From the IMG/VR virus record IMGVR_UViG_3300042923_000281, positions 186,001-250,000 of that record: 64,000 nucleotides of DNA. One strand, given 5' to 3'. The notes below the pieces were generated by a model. The model was not told the DNA's origin, ran no database searches, and was given only the letters and a program-made list of their open reading frames with translations. The position numbers and the translations under genes are program-made. Shown in pieces: positions 21,682 to 58,882 of the stretch (its first letter is position 1; each line of letters begins with the position of its first letter).

Positions 21682-21757
21682 TGGCTCCACGACCTGGACT
21701 CGAACCAGGGACACTACGGTTAACAGCCGTATGCTCTACCAACTGAGCTATCGCGGA
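21682..21757 (-). tRNA. tRNA-Asn(GTT)
   Basis: Full cloverleaf, anticodon loop CTGTTAA, encoded CCA. Confidence 0.95.
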
Positions 21758-21761
21758 ATGT

Positions 21762-21858
21762 GCTCACTGCTGGGCTATACCCAGATCCCCTGCGCTGCCA
21801 ATCCCATTCGCTTCGCCTTGAAGGGGCTTGCGGGATCGGCTGCCAATGGGCAGTGAGC
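21762..21858 (-). ncRNA. Putative structured ncRNA with acceptor/T-arm-like 8+5 stack
   Basis: GCTCACTG/CAGTGAGC stem next to CTGGG-TATAG-CCCAG; internal GCCGATCCC/GGGATTGGC stem. Confidence 0.5.
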
Positions 21859-21863
21859 GGTTT

Positions 21864-21986
21864 ATCAACATCTTCAAGTAGATTTCACCGTACCGTCGGC
21901 TGTGATGTTACTTTCTACTTGCCTACCTTTCGGCTGATTCCCTGCATCCAGGCTCACGCTTTAACTGGATACTTGAAGATGTCGAC
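21864..21986 (-). ncRNA. Putative structured multibranch ncRNA
   Basis: 17-bp closing stem GTCGACATCTTCAAGTA/TACTTGAAGATGTTGAT; internal TCCAG/CTGGA and GCC-GAAA-GGT hairpins. Confidence 0.55.
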
Positions 21987-21989
21987 AAC

Positions 21990-22068
21990 TGGAAGGGGCA
22001 TCTGGATTCGAACCAGAGAATGACAGGATCAAAACCTGTTGCCTTAGGCCAGACTTGGCTACACCCCT
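21990..22068 (-). tRNA. tRNA-Gln(TTG)
   Basis: Cloverleaf, anticodon loop TTTTGAT, TTCGAAT T loop, encoded CCA; A1-U72 and U73. Confidence 0.9.
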
Positions 22069-22108
22069 AAATGCTTGGGACGTCACTCCCGTGTTGCAAT
22101 GTAGCGTT

Positions 22109-22297
22109 GAACGCTTCCCCTTATGTTCCGTTCTCTCTGAGGCGGGACTCGAACCCGCAACGGACATGAGCTCTGATGCCCTAGGGCCGCACTCATTCCA
22201 CACCAACGGACAGGCAGCCACAATGGACTTAGGGTTGTTGGACCGAAGCCCTCACCCTCGGGTATACCAATTCCCCCACTCGTGAGAGGAAGCGTTC
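22109..22297 (-). ncRNA. Large tRNA-like RNA: Leu-type D arm and perfect T arm flanking about 95 nt of extra hairpins, no anticodon loop
   Basis: TG-GGG-GAATTGGTATA-CCC D arm, GCGGG-TTCGAGT-CCCGC T arm, CTCTC..GAG/CTC..GAGAG acceptor, outer GAACGCTTCC/GGAAGCGTTC stem. Confidence 0.7.
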
Positions 22298-22302
22298 GAA
22301 CA

Positions 22303-22379
22303 TGGCGGCTCCAAGGGGACTTGAACCCCTGACCCCCGGCGTGACAGGCCGGTGCTCTAACCAGCTGAGCTATGGAACC
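22303..22379 (-). tRNA. tRNA-Asp(GTC)
   Basis: Full cloverleaf, anticodon loop CTGTCAC, G73 followed by CCA. Confidence 0.95.
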
Positions 22380-22386
22380 TAGAAGA

Positions 22387-22474
22387 TGGTGGAGAGAGAA
22401 GGATTCGAACCTTCGAAGTGCGGTCGCACGTCAGATTTACAGTCTGATCCCTTTGACCACTCGGGAACCTCTCC
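22387..22474 (-). tRNA. tRNA-Tyr(GTA)
   Basis: Full cloverleaf with long variable arm, anticodon loop CTGTAAA, ACCA end. Confidence 0.95.
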
Positions 22475-22749: not shown

Positions 22750-23592
22750 TTACACGAGACGACGGTTGCCGTCAGCCAGGTGCACTTCGATTTCGATCTG
22801 GAAGTCTTCGCTGAACGAGGAGGTCACGTGAGTGATACCACGCTGTGCATCGAGGCCGATGTCGAACAACAGCTCATCACCGATGTCGCCCGAGATGCCG
22901 AAGCCACGAACCATCTTCTCAACACGCACGGTAGCGTCGTCGATTGGATCGCCGTTCTGATTGAACACGCTGATCGCGCCGACCGGGATGTTGTAGATGG
23001 TGCCGGTGTAGCAGCAGGCGTCGATCTGACCTTCCAGCGCCTTGAAGATGCGCGGCATGATGTCGAAGCGAGTGCCGTTGGCTACCGAGAAACGGATCTT
23101 GGCTTTGTGTTCCACGCGAGCTTCTGGCAGCAGCAGTTCCAGACGCTGAGTCAGGACGGTGTCCAGCTCGTGCATCAGTTGCAGTTGCTTTTGTTGTAGG
23201 GCCAACTGGTGAATGTCCAGCGTTGGGAACTTGTCCAGGAACGCTTGACGCTCGGGAGCACGGTCGTCAACTTCAGCCGCCTTCTCGTCCTGGATGTCCA
23301 GGAAGGTACGCAGCTTGTTGACGCGGTCGTAGTTCTCAGCACGCTCGCCCTTGAGGCGCTGAATGAATGGGGGCAGATCAGAAGCATCACCGATAGCGAT
23401 GTACGCTTTCTCGAACGTTTCCACTGGCGAGAGGCTTACGTAGCCGTCTTCGTATTCGACGACGTAGACTTCCTCTTCCATGTTGGGATGGTTGCCGCCG
23501 ACTGCACGGGTTTCAGCAGCGAGGCTGCGGGTCATCTTGGCAGCGCGAACGATCTTGGTGCCAGTGTAGTGTTGGTAGGTTGGAAGCGACAT
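22750..23592 (-). CDS. Multidomain protein, candidate immune-signal sponge fusion
   Basis: N-terminal YTGTK..YEDGYVSLSP..FEKAY domain, then a crAss001_48-like helical domain (QRLKGE..KLRTFL..QLQLM..VLTQRL), then an extra C-terminal domain. Confidence 0.55.
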   Translation of the reverse strand: MSLPTYQHYTGTKIVRAAKMTRSLAAETRAVGGNHPNMEEEVYVVEYEDGYVSLSPVETFEKAYIAIGDASDLPPFIQRLKGERAENYDRVNKLRTFLDIQDEKAAEVDDRAPERQAFLDKFPTLDIHQLALQQKQLQLMHELDTVLTQRLELLLPEARVEHKAKIRFSVANGTRFDIMPRIFKALEGQIDACCYTGTIYNIPVGAISVFNQNGDPIDDATVRVEKMVRGFGISGDIGDELLFDIGLDAQRGITHVTSSFSEDFQIEIEVHLADGNRRLV

Positions 23593-23624
23593 CGGTATAT
23601 CCTTACCGGTTGTTGGAAATAGGC

Positions 23625-23735: not shown

Positions 23736-23766
23736 CATAGACTACTTCCTAACCGGACTTTTTTAC
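23736..23766 (-). promoter_or_regulatory. Putative phage promoter (GTAAAAAA-N13-GTAGTCTATG)
   Basis: Second exact-architecture copy of the 22648 motif. Confidence 0.55.
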
Positions 23767-24191
23767 TCGTCGCGAAGACGCTTGTCCAACTCATCGCCCA
23801 GGATGTTGTACGTGTAACGGTCGAGGGTGCCGGACTTGATGCAGCTGTTCGCATGGTCGTGCTCGAAGCCTTCCAGCTGCGCGAGGGTGGCGCAGATCGT
23901 GTACGAGCGAATACGGCCTTCACCGCACTGCACGTAGATCACTTCAGCACCGGCATCGCGTTGTTCTTCAGCGAACTTGAAGATCTCCGCTGCACGCTCT
24001 GGAGTCATGCAGCCTTCCGGGTCGAGTTCCGGGGCATGGTCACGAGGGAAGAACATCACCTGCAAGAGCGGACGTTGGTCTTTGCCGGGGATGGCTACGC
24101 CGTTGCTGTAACGGTCGGTGATCGAGATCACAGGGGCTTTGGGATCGACTTGTTGCAAACGGCCCTTGCTGATATTCACGAGACGGGTCAT
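23763..24191 (-). CDS. CX5R (PTP/dual-specificity-like) phosphatase
   Basis: VISITD N-terminal motif and VQCGEGRIRS P-loop. Confidence 0.75.
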   Translation of the reverse strand: MTRLVNISKGRLQQVDPKAPVISITDRYSNGVAIPGKDQRPLLQVMFFPRDHAPELDPEGCMTPERAAEIFKFAEEQRDAGAEVIYVQCGEGRIRSYTICATLAQLEGFEHDHANSCIKSGTLDRYTYNILGDELDKRLRDE

Positions 24192-24205: not shown

Positions 24206-25090
24206 TTACTTCAGTTGGTAGTCTTTGACGATCTTACCGCCGACACCGGCGTTAACGACCATGGGGTTGATCCAGATGGTTTTACCGGATCGTTTATAAG
24301 TACGGTCATGGCCCCGGCGATCATGCTCGCGGCTCTGACGACGTTCACCACACGGACCAGTCTCAGTCCGGCCAGCGCTGACGATGCGTTCTGACTTGTT
24401 GACTACCAACACACGGTAGCTGTCATACGGCAAGGCTTTCTTGCGCTGTTCGGTGAAGGTCAACTTCTTGGCAGGAATCTCCTGCTCAGAGATGTTGCTG
24501 AAAGCAAAGGCTTCGCACAGCTCACACAGGGCCTTGATTGGACCTCGCATGGTTGCACCCGCCAGCTTCTCAAACCACTCCTTGCTCAGGCCAACGTCGT
24601 TGGTCAGGGTGCAAGGCAGTATGCCGCTTTCAAGCGCCTCGAACATCGGGCCCTTCTCTGCGGGCATCTTGCAGATGAACGGGGCACTGATCCATGAGCT
24701 TTGATCGGGTACGTGACTGACCACCGTGATCTCAATCGGACCCGAGCCTTCCTGAGTGGCGATCACAATGACCTTGTCCCGGTAACAGTGACCTGAGGTC
24801 ATTAGCTTCAGCACAGGGTCGTCGATGTGGTGCAAGGCGGCTTCAGCAGCCATGTCGGCCAGATAGTCTTCCTTGTGAAAATACTCAATCACCACACACG
24901 GGTAAGGCAACCGGATCTTCTCCGGCAAGCAACGCAGGTTGTTGTCCAGTACGCGTCCACCTTCCGGCAGGGCGAACTTGGGGGCTTTCATAGCGGCTTG
25001 AAGTGTCACCGCCAACTCTTTGTTTCCGGCAATCCGCTTCGAGCGTTTGAAGAACTCCATCGCTGTACGGAAATAGTTAGGACCTTCCAT
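24206..25090 (-). CDS. Hypothetical protein with C-terminal H-x-RRGH-x-R motif
   Basis: 294 aa; REHDRRGHDRTYKRSGKTIW resembles a motif common in uncharacterised phage proteins. Confidence 0.6.
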   Translation of the reverse strand: MEGPNYFRTAMEFFKRSKRIAGNKELAVTLQAAMKAPKFALPEGGRVLDNNLRCLPEKIRLPYPCVVIEYFHKEDYLADMAAEAALHHIDDPVLKLMTSGHCYRDKVIVIATQEGSGPIEITVVSHVPDQSSWISAPFICKMPAEKGPMFEALESGILPCTLTNDVGLSKEWFEKLAGATMRGPIKALCELCEAFAFSNISEQEIPAKKLTFTEQRKKALPYDSYRVLVVNKSERIVSAGRTETGPCGERRQSREHDRRGHDRTYKRSGKTIWINPMVVNAGVGGKIVKDYQLK

Positions 25091-25538
25091 TCTTTCTCCT
25101 GCTGTCGCCTAAGGCAACTGTGATGTCTGCCTCGATGAACGGATAGATGGCGCGGTAGACGTACTGAATGTCTTCCTCCCAATCCAATCCGCCGTGGCCA
25201 CAACCCATGGGTGGTAAGACGATGCGTCCAAGTCTGTGCCGGCTGGCCAAGACTGCTATCTTGTTGATGTGATGAACGACCAAGCTACGCGGAGAGGCAT
25301 CTCGCCAGTCCAGTTTGGTCGGCACCAACAGGTAACGCATGTCTTCGTGTTTATACGAGATGATGTTGCCCGGTTCGATGGTTGGATACATCTTGCGGTA
25401 GTGCTTGTGAAGCCCTGGGACCGTGTTACGGGCGGTTCGAGCCACACCGGCTCCCATTGCCCCGACCAGATTGATCGTGATCACACGTGTATCAGCAGGG
25501 ACGTCAAATAGATCCTGCTCCACGATCTTTAATGACAT
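25077..25538 (-). CDS. Macrodomain (ADP-ribose processing, DarG/TARG1-like)
   Basis: INLVGAMGAGVA, PTK..W and LPPMGCGHGGLDW motifs. Confidence 0.8.
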   Translation of the reverse strand: MSLKIVEQDLFDVPADTRVITINLVGAMGAGVARTARNTVPGLHKHYRKMYPTIEPGNIISYKHEDMRYLLVPTKLDWRDASPRSLVVHHINKIAVLASRHRLGRIVLPPMGCGHGGLDWEEDIQYVYRAIYPFIEADITVALGDSRRKNGRS

Positions 25539-25998
25539 GTTCAACCGCCTCGGTAAAGCAGCTTGCTAAGAAGGCTGCGGTGATGGGGGTATGAGACGGG
25601 ACAGTGATGGTCCAGACATGGCCCACGTGCTGGAACTCCCGTGCTACCAATCGTAGCCGATGTTTAAGGTGGATCTGACTGACCAATGAATCGATGTGAG
25701 GGTTACCGGACACGAATCCAGTGAACGTCATCACGAGATCCGCTAAGAAGTCTAACCCCTCCTCAGTCACGAAGAATGCACAGTAGAACTGCTTCTTCGT
25801 TTTGCCTTCCTCATGATGCGACGCACAGCAGTCTGTGGTCATCACACCGGGTTGTTCGTTCAGCAATGCCACTGCCTGTTTCAGTTCAGGGTCAACGAGG
25901 CTGTAGGGTGCCGAAGGATCGTTGAGGAGCTGTACCTTACGGTAATCATCCAATGCTTCTTGAACATTGGTGAGCTTGCCAGCAGCAGATAATTTCAT
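25504..25998 (-). CDS. Hypothetical protein with TYW3-like motif
   Basis: VDPELKQAVALLN..GVMTTDCCASH resembles the D..LN....TTSSC.G motif of the TYW3 fold; early promoter upstream. Confidence 0.45.
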   Translation of the reverse strand: MKLSAAGKLTNVQEALDDYRKVQLLNDPSAPYSLVDPELKQAVALLNEQPGVMTTDCCASHHEEGKTKKQFYCAFFVTEEGLDFLADLVMTFTGFVSGNPHIDSLVSQIHLKHRLRLVAREFQHVGHVWTITVPSHTPITAAFLASCFTEAVEHVIKDRGAGSI

Positions 25999-56968: not shown

Positions 56969-58882
56969 TTAGAAGCTATTGCCGAAGCCAAAGCCGTTAC
57001 CAACGCTACCACGCAGCGAACGTGCGCCATCACCAGTCACGCGGCGGCTCGAGAGCATGCCGTGAGTGAGGTCACCACCGACGAAGTCACGGATGCGAGT
57101 GTTACCACGCAGGCGACGGTTGCCGAAGGTGTAGTGAGCCGAACGCTGGTCGATGTTGATTTTGCAATCAGCAACGGCCATGGCCAGCGCTTCGATGAAC
57201 TGCGGGTTGACGAACGCCAGGTCTACGTAACGAGCGAACTTGACGTTGCTCGCACCGAGAGCGCTGGTCAGTTGGTCGTACTGCTCGCTGACGCGGATTT
57301 CAACGTCCAGGTCAACGCGGTCGATCACGTCCTGATAACGCAGGGCAGACTCGCCTTCGTCATTCGGGTTGGTGGCCATCCAGCGCAGCAGGTCCCATTC
57401 ACGCAGATCGCGCTCGTTGCCCTTCTCGTCGATCCAGGTGCCAGTCAGGTAACGAGCACCGGACATTTGCAGCGGGGTTTCGACGCCCAGTTCACGGGCA
57501 CGGCGGGTGAAGTTGCCGTTGGTCAGACGGTCGGCGTAGTCGTACAGACGGCCGATGGCGTCCTTGTTGGCGCTGTCGTCAGTTGCAGCGTCGGACAGCA
57601 GGGAGGTGATCCAGCTGTTGTCGCCGCCTTCTTCGAGCTCGATAGCCCAGGCCAGGTTGTCGTCAACCAGGCTGAAGAAGTACTGAGCCCACTTGTGGGT
57701 GTCCAGCGACGCACGGTTGTCGAACTCGACCGGAGTCTTGTCCTGATCCGGGCCGAGGATGTTCAGCAGACCAGCGTCACGGTGGTCGATCTCACCACGA
57801 GCAACATCGCCCGGCAGGTAAGTCTGAGCCCACGCTTGGTCTTTGGAGATGACCGACGCACCAGCCAGAGCCAGCAACAGCAGCTCAGGGGTGATGCCGT
57901 TGGCGTTGGTGTCCATGCGGTTGATCACGTACATCGGAGTGAAGTACGGCTGATCACGGCGCTGGGTACGGGACCAACGATCTTGTTCGACCGGCGGGGT
58001 GTACATGATGCTGACGTAACCGCCCAGGTTGGCCAGGCCAACAGGGATGTTCTGGTCGCCTTTGCGCACGATGCCGGCAACGGTAACGGCCAGGTCGGAA
58101 CGACGCGGCAGACCGTCGGCGGTCATGACTTCACGGCCAGACAGGTCGACGTTGATTTCCAGAGTCGACTGCTTGCTCAGCCAGTCCAGCGAGAAGAACA
58201 GGTCAGGCTGGAACAGGTTGCTGTAGATCGCTGCCAGAGCGGCCTGGGCGTAGAACACGACCTGACGCACTTCGGTGTTTTCCGGATCGTTGAAGTCAAC
58301 CTTGTGGCTCACTACACGCCAGCCGGCACGCACGATTTCAACGCTACGGCGCTGGCCTTCGAACGCCTTCTTCGCGATTTCGTCAACCAGAGCCAGGTAG
58401 CTCTCGGTGATGTAGTCGGAAGCGATGATCGGCAGCGGGTAGGTGCGGTGGTTGATCTCGACGTTACGCACGGTGGCGTCGTCGGTCATGCTCGAGGACA
58501 GAGCCAGGGCGGAAACCAGAACCTTGACGGTGCCGTTGTCTTCGACCGGGTATGCCAGGATCACAGAGCTGATGCTCACGTTGTGCTCGGAAGCTTCCAG
58601 ACCCAGAACTTGGATCTTGGAGAGGTCGATCAGGCCGGCGCCTGCAACCTGACGCTCTGGATCGAACCAGTGCTTAACCGACTTAACAGCGTTGACCAGA
58701 ACTTCGCCGCTGATGCGACGGGACATCGGTGCGCCGAGCAGGCGGTTGATGTCCAGCAGACCGGCGGTGGTCGCTTGGGATTCACGAGCCGGGCGCTCAG
58801 CACGCTGCTCTTGGCGCGGAGCTTCGCGGGAGGTACGCTCGTTGCTCGAAGCGGAGTTGTCGATGTCGTCTTGTACAGCCAT
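56969..58882 (-). CDS. chmA: Chimallin, phage nuclear shell protein
   Basis: 637 aa, immediately upstream of nvRNAP beta'-N; strong SD AAGGAG, highly biased codons, early promoter, flexible termini. Confidence 0.8.
   Translation of the reverse strand: MAVQDDIDNSASSNERTSREAPRQEQRAERPARESQATTAGLLDINRLLGAPMSRRISGEVLVNAVKSVKHWFDPERQVAGAGLIDLSKIQVLGLEASEHNVSISSVILAYPVEDNGTVKVLVSALALSSSMTDDATVRNVEINHRTYPLPIIASDYITESYLALVDEIAKKAFEGQRRSVEIVRAGWRVVSHKVDFNDPENTEVRQVVFYAQAALAAIYSNLFQPDLFFSLDWLSKQSTLEINVDLSGREVMTADGLPRRSDLAVTVAGIVRKGDQNIPVGLANLGGYVSIMYTPPVEQDRWSRTQRRDQPYFTPMYVINRMDTNANGITPELLLLALAGASVISKDQAWAQTYLPGDVARGEIDHRDAGLLNILGPDQDKTPVEFDNRASLDTHKWAQYFFSLVDDNLAWAIELEEGGDNSWITSLLSDAATDDSANKDAIGRLYDYADRLTNGNFTRRARELGVETPLQMSGARYLTGTWIDEKGNERDLREWDLLRWMATNPNDEGESALRYQDVIDRVDLDVEIRVSEQYDQLTSALGASNVKFARYVDLAFVNPQFIEALAMAVADCKINIDQRSAHYTFGNRRLRGNTRIRDFVGGDLTHGMLSSRRVTGDGARSLRGSVGNGFGFGNSF

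What the first reader, a model, noticed from the sequence alone, without database searches (positions are those of the whole stretch)
22750..23592. Three-domain candidate nucleotide-signal sponge
Seen: a GTK..Y.V.Y.DGY.S.SP...FE.AY domain, a crAss001_48-like helical hairpin, and an unrecognised C-terminal domain of about 120 aa. From memory, the first two domain types occur as fusion partners of Tad2/Acb-type sponges. Inference: an anti-CBASS/Thoeris fusion whose third domain may be a new anti-defence module. The phage nucleus would not protect against signalling-based defences.
Basis: inference. Interest (0 to 1): 0.6.

Follow-up and report, generated by a model that had tools for sequence, protein, structure and literature searches.

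The report
Three-domain Sequestin anti-Thoeris sponge
This jumbo-phage gene encodes a member of the recently characterised Sequestin family of proteins that soak up a bacterial alarm molecule, flanked by two uncharacterised domains, and the first of these turns out to sit almost only in front of known phage "sponge" domains.

Summary
The ORF (window 22750-23592, minus strand, 280 aa) and its three-part layout are real. Residues 73-155 match Pfam PF21825 above its cut-off. This family, crAss001_48, is now named Sequestin and has been shown experimentally to sequester 3'cADPR (1''-3' gcADPR) and block type I Thoeris. All four published ligand-contact residues are kept and invariant in the clade (R79, E83, Q136, R150). 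The segment is predicted to form the published antiparallel dimer (ipSAE 0.60 against a best control of 0.00).

The N-terminal motif domain (residues 1-72) folds confidently (pLDDT 91) into a small unit with no PDB match. It is not Tad2, Acb4 or Lockin. Of 50 non-redundant viral proteins carrying it, 29 also carry Sequestin, 10 Tad2-like and 10 Acb4, and no other Pfam family appears. It is absent from Pfam and from the sponge literature I could search.

The C-terminal β-sandwich (residues 156-280) occurs only in this small clade of chimallin-encoding jumbo phages. It has weak capsid-protein-like structural matches and no known function.

It is unsupported for CBASS and untested for the third domain. 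I rate this a new variant of a known kind.

The parts
22750..23592 (-). Whole ORF: 280 codons plus stop, single copy in a complete 276,978-bp phage genome with terminal repeats
23600..23604 (-). Shine-Dalgarno-like AAGGA, 7 nt upstream of the ATG at 23590-23592
   Evidence: the start position agrees with the N-termini of 15 homologues
23377..23592 (-). N-terminal sponge-associated domain (residues 1-72), topology beta-alpha-beta-beta-alpha, long form with an insert at about residues 22-40. Conserved Y9, G11, K13, Y43, V45, Y47, D49, G50, Y51, S53, S55, P56, F60
   Evidence: PHROGs; alignments A3 and A6; AF2 pLDDT 91.3; no PDB match; same fold at the N-terminus of Sequestin, Tad2, Acb4 and Acb2/Tad1-hairpin protein clusters; partner counts
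23128..23376 (-). Sequestin (PF21825) helical hairpin, residues 73-155: helix 1 at 75-105, a clade-specific loop insertion of about 19 aa at 106-126, helix 2 at 127-154
   Evidence: Pfam; model; alignment with validated T4 Y16O; predicted homodimer
23356..23358 (-). Codon of R79, equivalent to SequestinA R8 and T4 Y16O R7 (phosphate contact)
23344..23346 (-). Codon of E83, equivalent to SequestinA E12 and Y16O E11 (ribose contact, essential)
23185..23187 (-). Codon of Q136, equivalent to SequestinA Q47 and Y16O Q45 (contact from the second protomer, essential)
23143..23145 (-). Codon of R150, equivalent to SequestinA R61 and Y16O R59 (ribose contact, essential)
22753..23127 (-). C-terminal clade-specific beta-sandwich domain (residues 156-280), together with the two Sequestin helices the most conserved part of the protein within the clade

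Best explanation
The gene encodes a cytoplasmic anti-Thoeris signal sponge of the Sequestin family, built into a three-domain protein. Shown: residues 73-155 are a PF21825/Sequestin helical hairpin that keeps the four residues contacting the ligand in characterised members. Inferred from the family: two hairpins pack antiparallel, helix 2 against helix 2, and create two symmetric interface pockets. Each pocket is lined by R79, E83 and R150 of one chain and Q136 of the other. The pockets trap 1''-3' gcADPR (3'cADPR) made by the host ThsB TIR protein, so the ThsA NADase is not switched on and infection proceeds. This would matter for a nucleus-forming phage, because the chimallin shell shields DNA but not the cytoplasmic NAD+ pool. 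The N-terminal domain is a self-standing module of about 50-70 aa that evolution places almost exclusively in front of sponge domains (Sequestin, Tad2, Acb4, Acb2/Tad1 hairpin). I infer that it serves sponge function generally, either as a further small-molecule site or as an assembly or partner-binding module. The C-terminal beta-sandwich is a lineage-specific addition whose role is unknown; oligomerisation or scaffolding, a second binding activity, or virion association are all possible.
For: Pfam PF21825 at 37.5 bits against a cut-off of 24.8, in all 15 clade members. The family is validated: 10 of 13 tested members block type I Thoeris, the purified protein binds and releases intact 3'cADPR, and E/Q/R-to-A mutants lose activity. 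T4 Y16O is validated. The Ab09 Sequestin domain was crystallised as an antiparallel dimer and binds gcADPR tightly within a fusion protein in a Pseudomonas phage. MAFFT with T4 Y16O makes R7, E11, Q45 and R59 invariant columns, equal to R79, E83, Q136 and R150 here. The spacings R-x3-E and Q-x13-R are identical to SequestinA and B. The homodimer model gives ipSAE 0.60 against a best control of 0.00; that mark was reached by 21 of 30 solved homo-pairs and 0 of 23 single chains; runs agree in at least 96% of contacts and partner pLDDT is at least 79; R150 touches Q136 and Q133 of the other copy. The N-domain shows near-exclusive co-occurrence with three sponge Pfam families (29, 10 and 10 of 50, with no other family), and Atlas shape matches add a fourth. 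The gene shows module-wise mosaicism typical of arms-race genes. The genome encodes chimallin, and the closest cultured relative infects P. aeruginosa.
Against: There is no biochemical or genetic test of this protein. Three of 13 tested Sequestins were inactive. The clade has an insertion of about 19 residues in the hairpin loop and bulky domains on both sides, whose effect on the pockets is unknown. The dimer prediction may reflect the model's memory of solved Sequestin-like dimers (caveat). The host is unknown, so it is also unknown whether it carries type I Thoeris. All three domains are acidic (pI about 5), whereas sponge pockets are described as positively charged. Only K13 is an invariant basic residue in the N-domain, which argues against that domain being a classical sponge.
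Confidence: 0.68

Rival explanations
1. A multi-signal sponge: the Sequestin hairpin binds gcADPR, and the N-terminal and/or C-terminal domain is a further, so far undescribed ligand-binding module for another signal (for example His-ADPR, N7-cADPR, cyclic di- or trinucleotides), as in the known Acb4-Tad2 and Acb4-Sequestin double sponges.
For: Fusions of two sponge domains are common and functional. The N-domain is fused to three or four unrelated sponge families and also exists as stand-alone clusters of 75-120 aa, which is the same pattern that led to the discovery of Sequestin. Its invariant residues are mostly aromatic plus K, D and S, as expected for a nucleotide site.
Against: No structural match to any sponge. 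The N-domain is acidic with a single invariant basic residue. It is always N-terminal and abuts the sponge domain, which suits an accessory role equally well. The C-domain is restricted to one small clade. No oligomer or pocket model was made for either domain.
Confidence: 0.18
2. A virion-associated or structural protein: the C-terminal beta-sandwich docks on the capsid or another virion part and the helical hairpin is a coiled-coil stalk. Any sponge-like sequence features would be vestigial, or the sponge would be delivered pre-made with the virion.
For: The best structural matches of residues 156-278 are jumbo-phage major capsid proteins: S6 Z 7.6 over 111 aa, phiKZ Z 6.9 over 116 aa, phi-kp24 Z 5.8, P1 Z 5.6. 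BFVD matches include a Psa21 protein annotated as virion structural protein. The gene lies a few genes from a gp26-like baseplate hub gene.
Against: These Z values lie in the range the tool calls common for unrelated folds. The four ligand residues are invariant, which a mere stalk would not require. The Dec decoration-protein note in the DT01 record is noise (pairwise E 0.48 and 18). The immediate neighbours are a Macro-domain protein and a phosphatase-like protein, not structural genes.
Confidence: 0.07
3. A Sequestin-fold protein with a different role, for example a regulator whose Tudor/CarD-RID-like N-domain binds a host protein such as RNA polymerase, with the hairpin serving only as a dimerisation element.
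For: The top, weak structural neighbours of the N-domain are the Mfd and CarD RNA-polymerase-interacting domains and Tudor or chromo domains (Z 2.6-3.3).
Against: Z of 3.3 or less is noise level. This does not explain why the domain sits in front of sponge domains in essentially every sampled protein (no other Pfam family in 50), nor why the ligand residues are conserved.
Confidence: 0.05

Closest known systems
Sequestin (Pfam PF21825, formerly crAss001_48): SequestinA-M, T4 Y16O (Tal et al., bioRxiv 10.1101/2025.07.12.664507)
   Same: HMM match above the cut-off; two-helix hairpin; the R-x3-E and Q-x13-R ligand residues are invariant; predicted antiparallel helix-2/helix-2 homodimer with R150 next to Q136 of the partner chain.
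   Different: Characterised members are 60-90 aa stand-alone proteins. Here the hairpin is the middle third of a 280-aa protein, has a loop insertion of about 19 residues with an extra short helix, and is flanked by two unannotated domains.
Acb4-Sequestin fusion gp59 of P. aeruginosa phage Ab09 (bioRxiv 10.64898/2026.06.04.730250)
   Same: Sequestin works inside a multidomain protein of a Pseudomonas phage. Its structure is an antiparallel dimer, and it binds 1''-3' gcADPR tightly.
   Different: Ab09 gp59 is 147 aa, Acb4 (1-83) plus Sequestin (84-147), with no N-domain and no beta-sandwich. The target has no Acb4.
phrog_32732 two-domain proteins (Kosakonia phage Kc237 119 aa, Pseudomonas phage phi1 141 aa) and the phage CL triple fusion Acb4 + N-domain + Sequestin
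   Same: The same N-domain directly followed by a Sequestin hairpin. The CL N-domain carries the same GGKPNHP.H.GY insert found in part of the target clade.
   Different: These lack the C-terminal beta-sandwich and the hairpin-loop insertion. None has been characterised experimentally.
Tad2 (PF11195) and Acb4 (PF13876, PDB 9e4w) sponges
   Same: They share the N-terminal partner domain with the target's family: 10 and 10 of 50 N-domain proteins respectively.
   Different: Neither domain is present in the target or in its genome. The N-domain model does not resemble Tad2: 8wje ranks 38th at E 3.8.
PA10_00177 of Pseudomonas phage pPa_SNUABM_DT01 (MW735835)
   Same: Full-length orthologue with all three domains, 28% identity over 98% of the length, in the same syntenic position.
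   Different: Annotated only as a hypothetical protein, with a spurious Dec note.

Membership tests
Sequestin (PF21825) | Match to the family HMM above the curated cut-off | tested here: met
   37.5 bits against 24.8, E 2.3e-9, residues 74-152 covering model positions 1-60 of 61. All 15 clade members match. It is the only PF21825 hit in the genome.
Sequestin (PF21825) | Two-helix hairpin fold | tested here: met
   AF2 helices at 75-105 and 127-154, pLDDT 80-92. A loop insertion of about 19 aa is an addition to the fold.
Sequestin (PF21825) | Ligand-contact residues: SequestinA R8, E12, Q47, R61 (SequestinB and Y16O R7, E11, Q45, R59); E, Q and the second R are essential | tested here: met
   R79, E83, Q136 and R150 fall in the invariant columns of the MAFFT alignment with T4 Y16O. 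They are invariant in the clade. The residue list comes and the sequences.
Sequestin (PF21825) | Antiparallel homodimer (or tetramer) with pockets at the protomer interface | tested here: met
   Prediction only: ipSAE 0.60 against a best control of 0.00; the mark was reached by 21 of 30 solved homo-pairs and 0 of 23 single chains; contacts agree in at least 96% of cases; pLDDT at least 79. Antiparallel contacts include 146:139, 143:136, 150:133 and 150:136. The pass may stem from the model's memory of solved relatives.
Sequestin (PF21825) | Binds 3'cADPR and inhibits type I Thoeris | not testable with these tools
   Needs binding and plaque assays. 3'cADPR is not among the ligands offered by the complex tool.
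Tad2 (PF11195, DUF2829) | HMM match or Tad2 fold in any domain | tested here: not met
   No hit at E up to 10. A six-frame scan of the genome found none at E up to 0.1. The N-domain profile against PDB sequences found none. The N-domain model against PDB gave SPO1 Tad2 8wje only at E 3.8, and it is absent from the VIA top 50, which ends at Z 2.4.
Acb4 (PF13876, PDB 9e4w) | HMM match or dsRBD-like fold | tested here: not met
   No hit. In phage CL, Acb4 (residues 17-90) and the N-domain (about 110-185) are separate adjacent domains.
Acb2 / Tad1 | HMM match (PF24729 hairpin) or sequence match to solved Acb2/Tad1 chains | tested here: not met
   No Pfam hit. No PDB sequence hit at E up to 10.
Lockin | Beta-rich protomer forming a hexameric cog with K-rich interface pockets | tested here: inconclusive
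   No Lockin entry appeared among the Foldseek or VIA matches of the model, but I could not confirm that a Lockin structure is in the PDB copy, and the C-domain was not folded alone. The authors found no Lockin in INPHARED phages, whereas the DT01 orthologue of this protein is in that collection.
Dec-type capsid decoration protein (ST64T / phage L) | Sequence similarity to Dec | tested here: not met
   Pairwise BLASTP E 0.48 for the target and 18 for the DT01 orthologue.
HK97-type major capsid protein domain | Clear structural match of the C-domain to a capsid-protein domain | tested here: inconclusive
   Z 5.6-7.6 over 92-116 residues to the S6, phiKZ, phi-kp24 and P1 capsid proteins. This lies within the range the tool rates as common for unrelated models, and the C-domain was not folded alone.

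The most novel reading that the evidence does not exclude
The N-terminal domain of about 50-70 aa (core Y.G.K.v.A...GY.V.Y.DGY.SWSP..VFE.AY) is an undescribed, widespread module dedicated to phage signal sponges. It could be an eighth sponge or ligand-binding family, found by the same guilt-by-fusion logic that revealed Sequestin. Alternatively it could be a universal accessory that all sponge types need against a common host counter-measure, such as decoy-based sponge sensing by Panoptes. In this jumbo-phage clade the module has additionally recruited a lineage-specific beta-sandwich that may add a further anti-defence or virion-delivery function.
Probability: 0.3. Interest if true: 0.8.

Novelty: new variant of a known kind. 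Interest (0 to 1): 0.6.

Why it matters
There are three reasons.

First, it assigns a concrete and testable function, sequestration of 1''-3' gcADPR to block type I Thoeris, to a conserved hypothetical gene of a little-studied clade of chimallin-encoding jumbo phages. This fits the idea that a phage nucleus does not protect against NAD+-depleting signalling defences.

Second, and more generally, the analysis exposes a small domain, absent from Pfam and from the sponge literature I could search, that occurs almost exclusively at the N-terminus of three or four unrelated sponge families. That is the same kind of association that led to the discovery of Sequestin. It can be tested directly with existing assays: binding panels, truncations, and Thoeris, CBASS, Pycsar and Panoptes strains.

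Third, annotation pipelines that report "Acb4-Sequestin" or "Tad2-Sequestin" fusions may be overlooking this third module.

Tried and rejected
- **N-domain as a disguised Acb4 or Tad2.** Rejected: separate domains in phage CL, no HMM hits, no fold match.
- **N-domain as Lockin or TadIV-1.** Rejected on the published descriptions: Lockin is a beta hexamer absent from INPHARED, and TadIV-1 is a two-helix protein.
- **HIT domain.** The hit (E 0.015, below the cut-off, lying over the helices) is noise.
- **Giant-protein hits of the C-domain profile.** These BON/secretin and Big_12/LRR proteins match only in short repeated stretches and were treated as spurious.
- **Word searches.** Searches with the C-domain alone and with residues 1-155 found nothing. 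These are limited by length window and word sharing, so they are not evidence of absence. The exhaustive profile search is the basis for the rarity claim.
- **ESM Atlas feature searches.** No usable lead for either flanking domain.
- **VIA wide search on the whole model.** Swamped by the hairpin.
- **Tool failures.** The search for related loci with the diverse N-domain alignment failed for lack of a conserved stretch, and a tighter alignment worked. The first complex-prediction run found the machine busy, and the identical request was repeated.
- **PDB 6E3C.** This entry is mentioned in one paper as a recurrent extra domain. I could not identify it, and it is not the Acb4 structure found by sequence.
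- **SequestinA-D sequences.** Those printed in the paper's Table S1 were compared by eye only. T4 Y16O, taken by reference, served for the tool alignment.
- Not used.

Full report
**Observation.** The window holds an ORF of 280 codons at 22750-23592 on the minus strand. An AAGGA ribosome-binding site lies 7 nt before the ATG. The start agrees with the N-termini of 15 homologues. The window is part of a complete 276,978-bp virus record with direct terminal repeats, and the gene is single-copy there. The motif domain is there letter for letter (residues 11-64). A Pfam crAss001_48 hairpin lies at residues 74-152 (E 2.3e-9, 37.5 bits against a cut-off of 24.8). A C-terminal part of about 125 residues matches no library. 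An AlphaFold2 model made from the 15-sequence family alignment gives two long helices (75-105 and 127-154, pLDDT 80-92) and a nine-strand beta domain (160-274, pLDDT 75-88). The N-terminal part was poor in that model.

**Genome and context.** The nearest cultured phage is the 265-kb Pseudomonas aeruginosa phage pPa_SNUABM_DT01. It carries a full-length orthologue (PA10_00177, 28% identity over 98% of the length) in the same syntenic slot: a gp26-like baseplate hub gene, several hypotheticals, a putative Tyr-phosphatase, this gene, then tRNAs. Fifteen closer relatives (51-100% identity) lie on metagenomic contigs of about 276 kb. More distant carriers keep the neighbourhood.

**The middle domain is a known sponge.** A full-text search for PF21825 led to Tal et al. 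(bioRxiv 10.1101/2025.07.12.664507).
- They noticed that PF21825 is the commonest fusion partner of Tad2 (PF11195, 60 cases) and of Acb4 (PF13876, 91 cases).
- They tested 13 members and found that 10 inhibit type I Thoeris.
- They showed that the purified protein binds 3'cADPR and releases it intact, and they named the family Sequestin.
- Modelling places the ligand in two symmetric pockets at the interface of an antiparallel dimer, contacted by R8, E12 and R61 of one protomer and Q47 of the other in SequestinA (R7, E11, Q45 and R59 in SequestinB). E, Q and R61 are essential.
- T4 Y16O is a validated member.
- A 2026 preprint crystallised the Sequestin domain of the Acb4-Sequestin fusion of P. 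aeruginosa phage Ab09 as such a dimer and measured tight 1''-3' gcADPR binding.
- Newer Pfam labels already call PF21825 "Sequestin".

**Membership test.** I located Y16O in the T4 record with the Pfam model. I aligned it with the hairpins of the target clade and four other phages. The invariant columns are Y16O R7, E11, L22, F25, Q45 and R59, which correspond to R79, E83, L94, F97, Q136 and R150 in the target. The same residues are invariant in the 15-member clade. By eye they line up with SequestinA and B as printed in the paper's Table S1, with identical R-x3-E and Q-x13-R spacing. Those sequences have no reference, so I did not type them into any tool. The clade differs from characterised members by an insertion of about 19 residues in the hairpin loop. 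A homodimer prediction of residues 70-158 passed. The ipSAE was 0.60 against a best control of 0.00. That mark was reached by 21 of 30 solved homo-pairs and 0 of 23 single chains. The runs agreed in at least 96% of contacts, and partner pLDDT was at least 79. The contacts are antiparallel helix 2 on helix 2 (146:139, 143:136, 139:139), and R150 of one copy lies next to Q136 and Q133 of the other. This is the published pocket geometry. The pass may partly reflect the model's memory of solved relatives, and it shows likeness rather than binding. The genome holds no other PF21825 domain, no Tad2-like domain and no Acb4 domain.

**The N-terminal domain.** PHROGs 32732, 9467 and 872 cover it, all of unknown function. 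Related proteins in cultured phages show that the N-domain followed directly by Sequestin is a recurrent module of 116-141 aa. Examples are Kc237, next to exonuclease, recombinase and SSB genes, and phi1, near NinG. In phage CL a 253-aa protein reads Acb4 (17-90), N-domain (about 110-185), Sequestin (188-247). The N-domain is therefore neither Acb4 nor part of the Sequestin model.

A scan of IMG/VR gave 61 loci. Of 50 non-redundant N-domain proteins, 29 carry PF21825, 10 carry PF11195 (Tad2-like) and 10 carry PF13876 (Acb4). No other Pfam family appears. This sample comes from two peptide patterns of the short form and is not unbiased.

With a 58-sequence alignment the domain folds confidently (pLDDT 91.3, pTM 0.74, topology beta-alpha-beta-beta-alpha). 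It has no PDB counterpart. The best Foldseek E is 0.64. The best VIA Z is 3.3, to Tudor, chromo, CarD-RID and DUF1653-type units. SPO1 Tad2 appears only at E 3.8. Its profile finds no solved sequence.

A shape search of the ESM Atlas finds the same fold (TM 0.67-0.76 over 63-69 residues) at the N-termini of several kinds of viral cluster. These are annotated Sequestin, Tad2-like, Sequestin plus Tad2, Sequestin plus Acb4, and Acb2_Tad1_hairpin. It also finds unannotated stand-alone clusters of 75-120 aa.

[quoted passage not shown] None fits this domain, and I found no paper describing it. Its function is open. For a ligand site: the invariant residues are aromatic plus K, D and S, and the fusion pattern is suggestive. 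Against: the domain is acidic and has a single invariant basic residue.

**The C-terminal domain.** The word search with the domain alone found nothing. The exhaustive profile search of 1.84 billion representatives found it only at the C-terminus of 263-289-aa proteins of the same architecture, plus one fragment. The remaining hits were short stretches in giant BON/secretin or Big_12/LRR repeat proteins, which I regard as spurious. It has no paralogue in its own genome, and among 50,697 phage records only the DT01 orthologue matches. Within the clade it is, together with the two Sequestin helices, the best conserved part: mean pairwise identity is 0.74, against 0.52 for the N-domain and 0.45 for the loop.

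Foldseek found no PDB match at E below 1e-3, only lectin-like and capsid rows. In BFVD it matched small proteins of 100-145 aa from phiKZ-like phages at TM 0.5-0.63, one of them annotated as a virion structural protein. That tool gives no aligned range, so assigning those matches to the C-domain is my inference from their length. Re-ranking Foldseek's list with VIA gave jumbo-phage major capsid proteins as the best matches for residues 156-278: S6 Z 7.6 over 111 aa, phiKZ Z 6.9 over 116 aa, phi-kp24 Z 5.8 over 115 aa, and P1 Z 5.6 over 92 aa. These values are in the range the tool rates as common for unrelated models. I therefore call it a beta-sandwich of unresolved affinity and do not call it a new fold. 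No sponge family appears among its matches. The Dec note in the DT01 record is noise.

**Mosaicism.** The modules recombine independently. P0004 shares 99% of the N-domain with the target but 14% of the loop. P0005 has a different N-domain allele (36%) with a 97% identical C-domain. This is the pattern expected of a gene in an arms race.

**Verdict.** The most likely reading (about 0.68) is a Sequestin-type sponge for 1''-3' gcADPR that protects a nucleus-forming jumbo phage from type I Thoeris, carrying two accessory domains. Membership of the Sequestin family is met on every feature I could test. Ligand binding and Thoeris inhibition remain untested. Anti-CBASS activity has no support. The novel element is not the gene as such but its flanking domains, above all the N-terminal sponge-associated module.

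Noticed in passing
window 25077-25544 (-): Macro-domain protein (155 aa) three genes upstream of the target: Pfam Macro E 1.1e-4, and PDB MacroD/YmdB-type chains at E 8e-14. An ADP-ribose-processing enzyme next to a gcADPR sponge could mean a small cluster directed at ADP-ribose-based defence. The gene is also present in the distant carrier L077.
   Followed up: partly
window 23763-24191 (-): 142-aa protein immediately upstream of the target with a CX5R(S) phosphatase signature (CGEGRIRS). The DT01 orthologue is annotated as a putative Tyr phosphatase. No Pfam or PDB sequence hit. A gene of this size sits directly upstream in both distant carriers: 142 aa in L077 and 141 aa in L076.
   Followed up: partly
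window 56969-58882 (-): Chimallin (phiKZ gp054) homologue, 24% identity over about 600 residues, E 4.7e-20. The phage is probably nucleus-forming.
   Followed up: yes
window 21682-22474 (-): tRNA cluster (Asn-GTT, Gln-TTG, Asp-GTC, Tyr-GTA) directly downstream of the target. DT01 has tRNA-Asn and tRNA-Asp at the same place. The Asp region is 88% identical to Pseudomonas phage D6.
   Followed up: no
L008:1165-1926 (Pseudomonas phage CL, OR687461): 253-aa triple fusion of Acb4 (PF13876), the N-domain and Sequestin (PF21825) in an unannotated Schitoviridae genome. Published 'Acb4-Sequestin' or 'PF21825-Acb4' fusions may in some phages hide this third module.
   Followed up: yes
L003:2495-3691 (Xoo-sp14_45); L031 and L039:1501-2697: 398-aa proteins of 228-234-kb jumbo phages: N-domain plus Sequestin plus about 270 unannotated C-terminal residues. 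This is a second, independent case of the module acquiring a large C-terminal extension.
   Followed up: no
L035 and L036:1501-1764: An N-domain variant with a Cys-rich insert of about 35 residues (paired CxxxC motifs) between the first strand and the GY.V.Y strand. It may be a metal-binding elaboration.
   Followed up: no
window 22750-23592 and homologues P0002-P0015: Module-wise mosaicism: two N-domain alleles (with or without the GGKxNHPxHxGY insert) and two hairpin-loop alleles combine independently of the C-domain.
   Followed up: partly
window 24206-25090 (-) and 25504-25998 (-): 294-aa and 164-aa proteins between the phosphatase-like gene, the Macro gene and the hub gene, with no Pfam match. 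A 292-aa gene sits at the corresponding position in the distant carrier L077. Function unknown.
   Followed up: no
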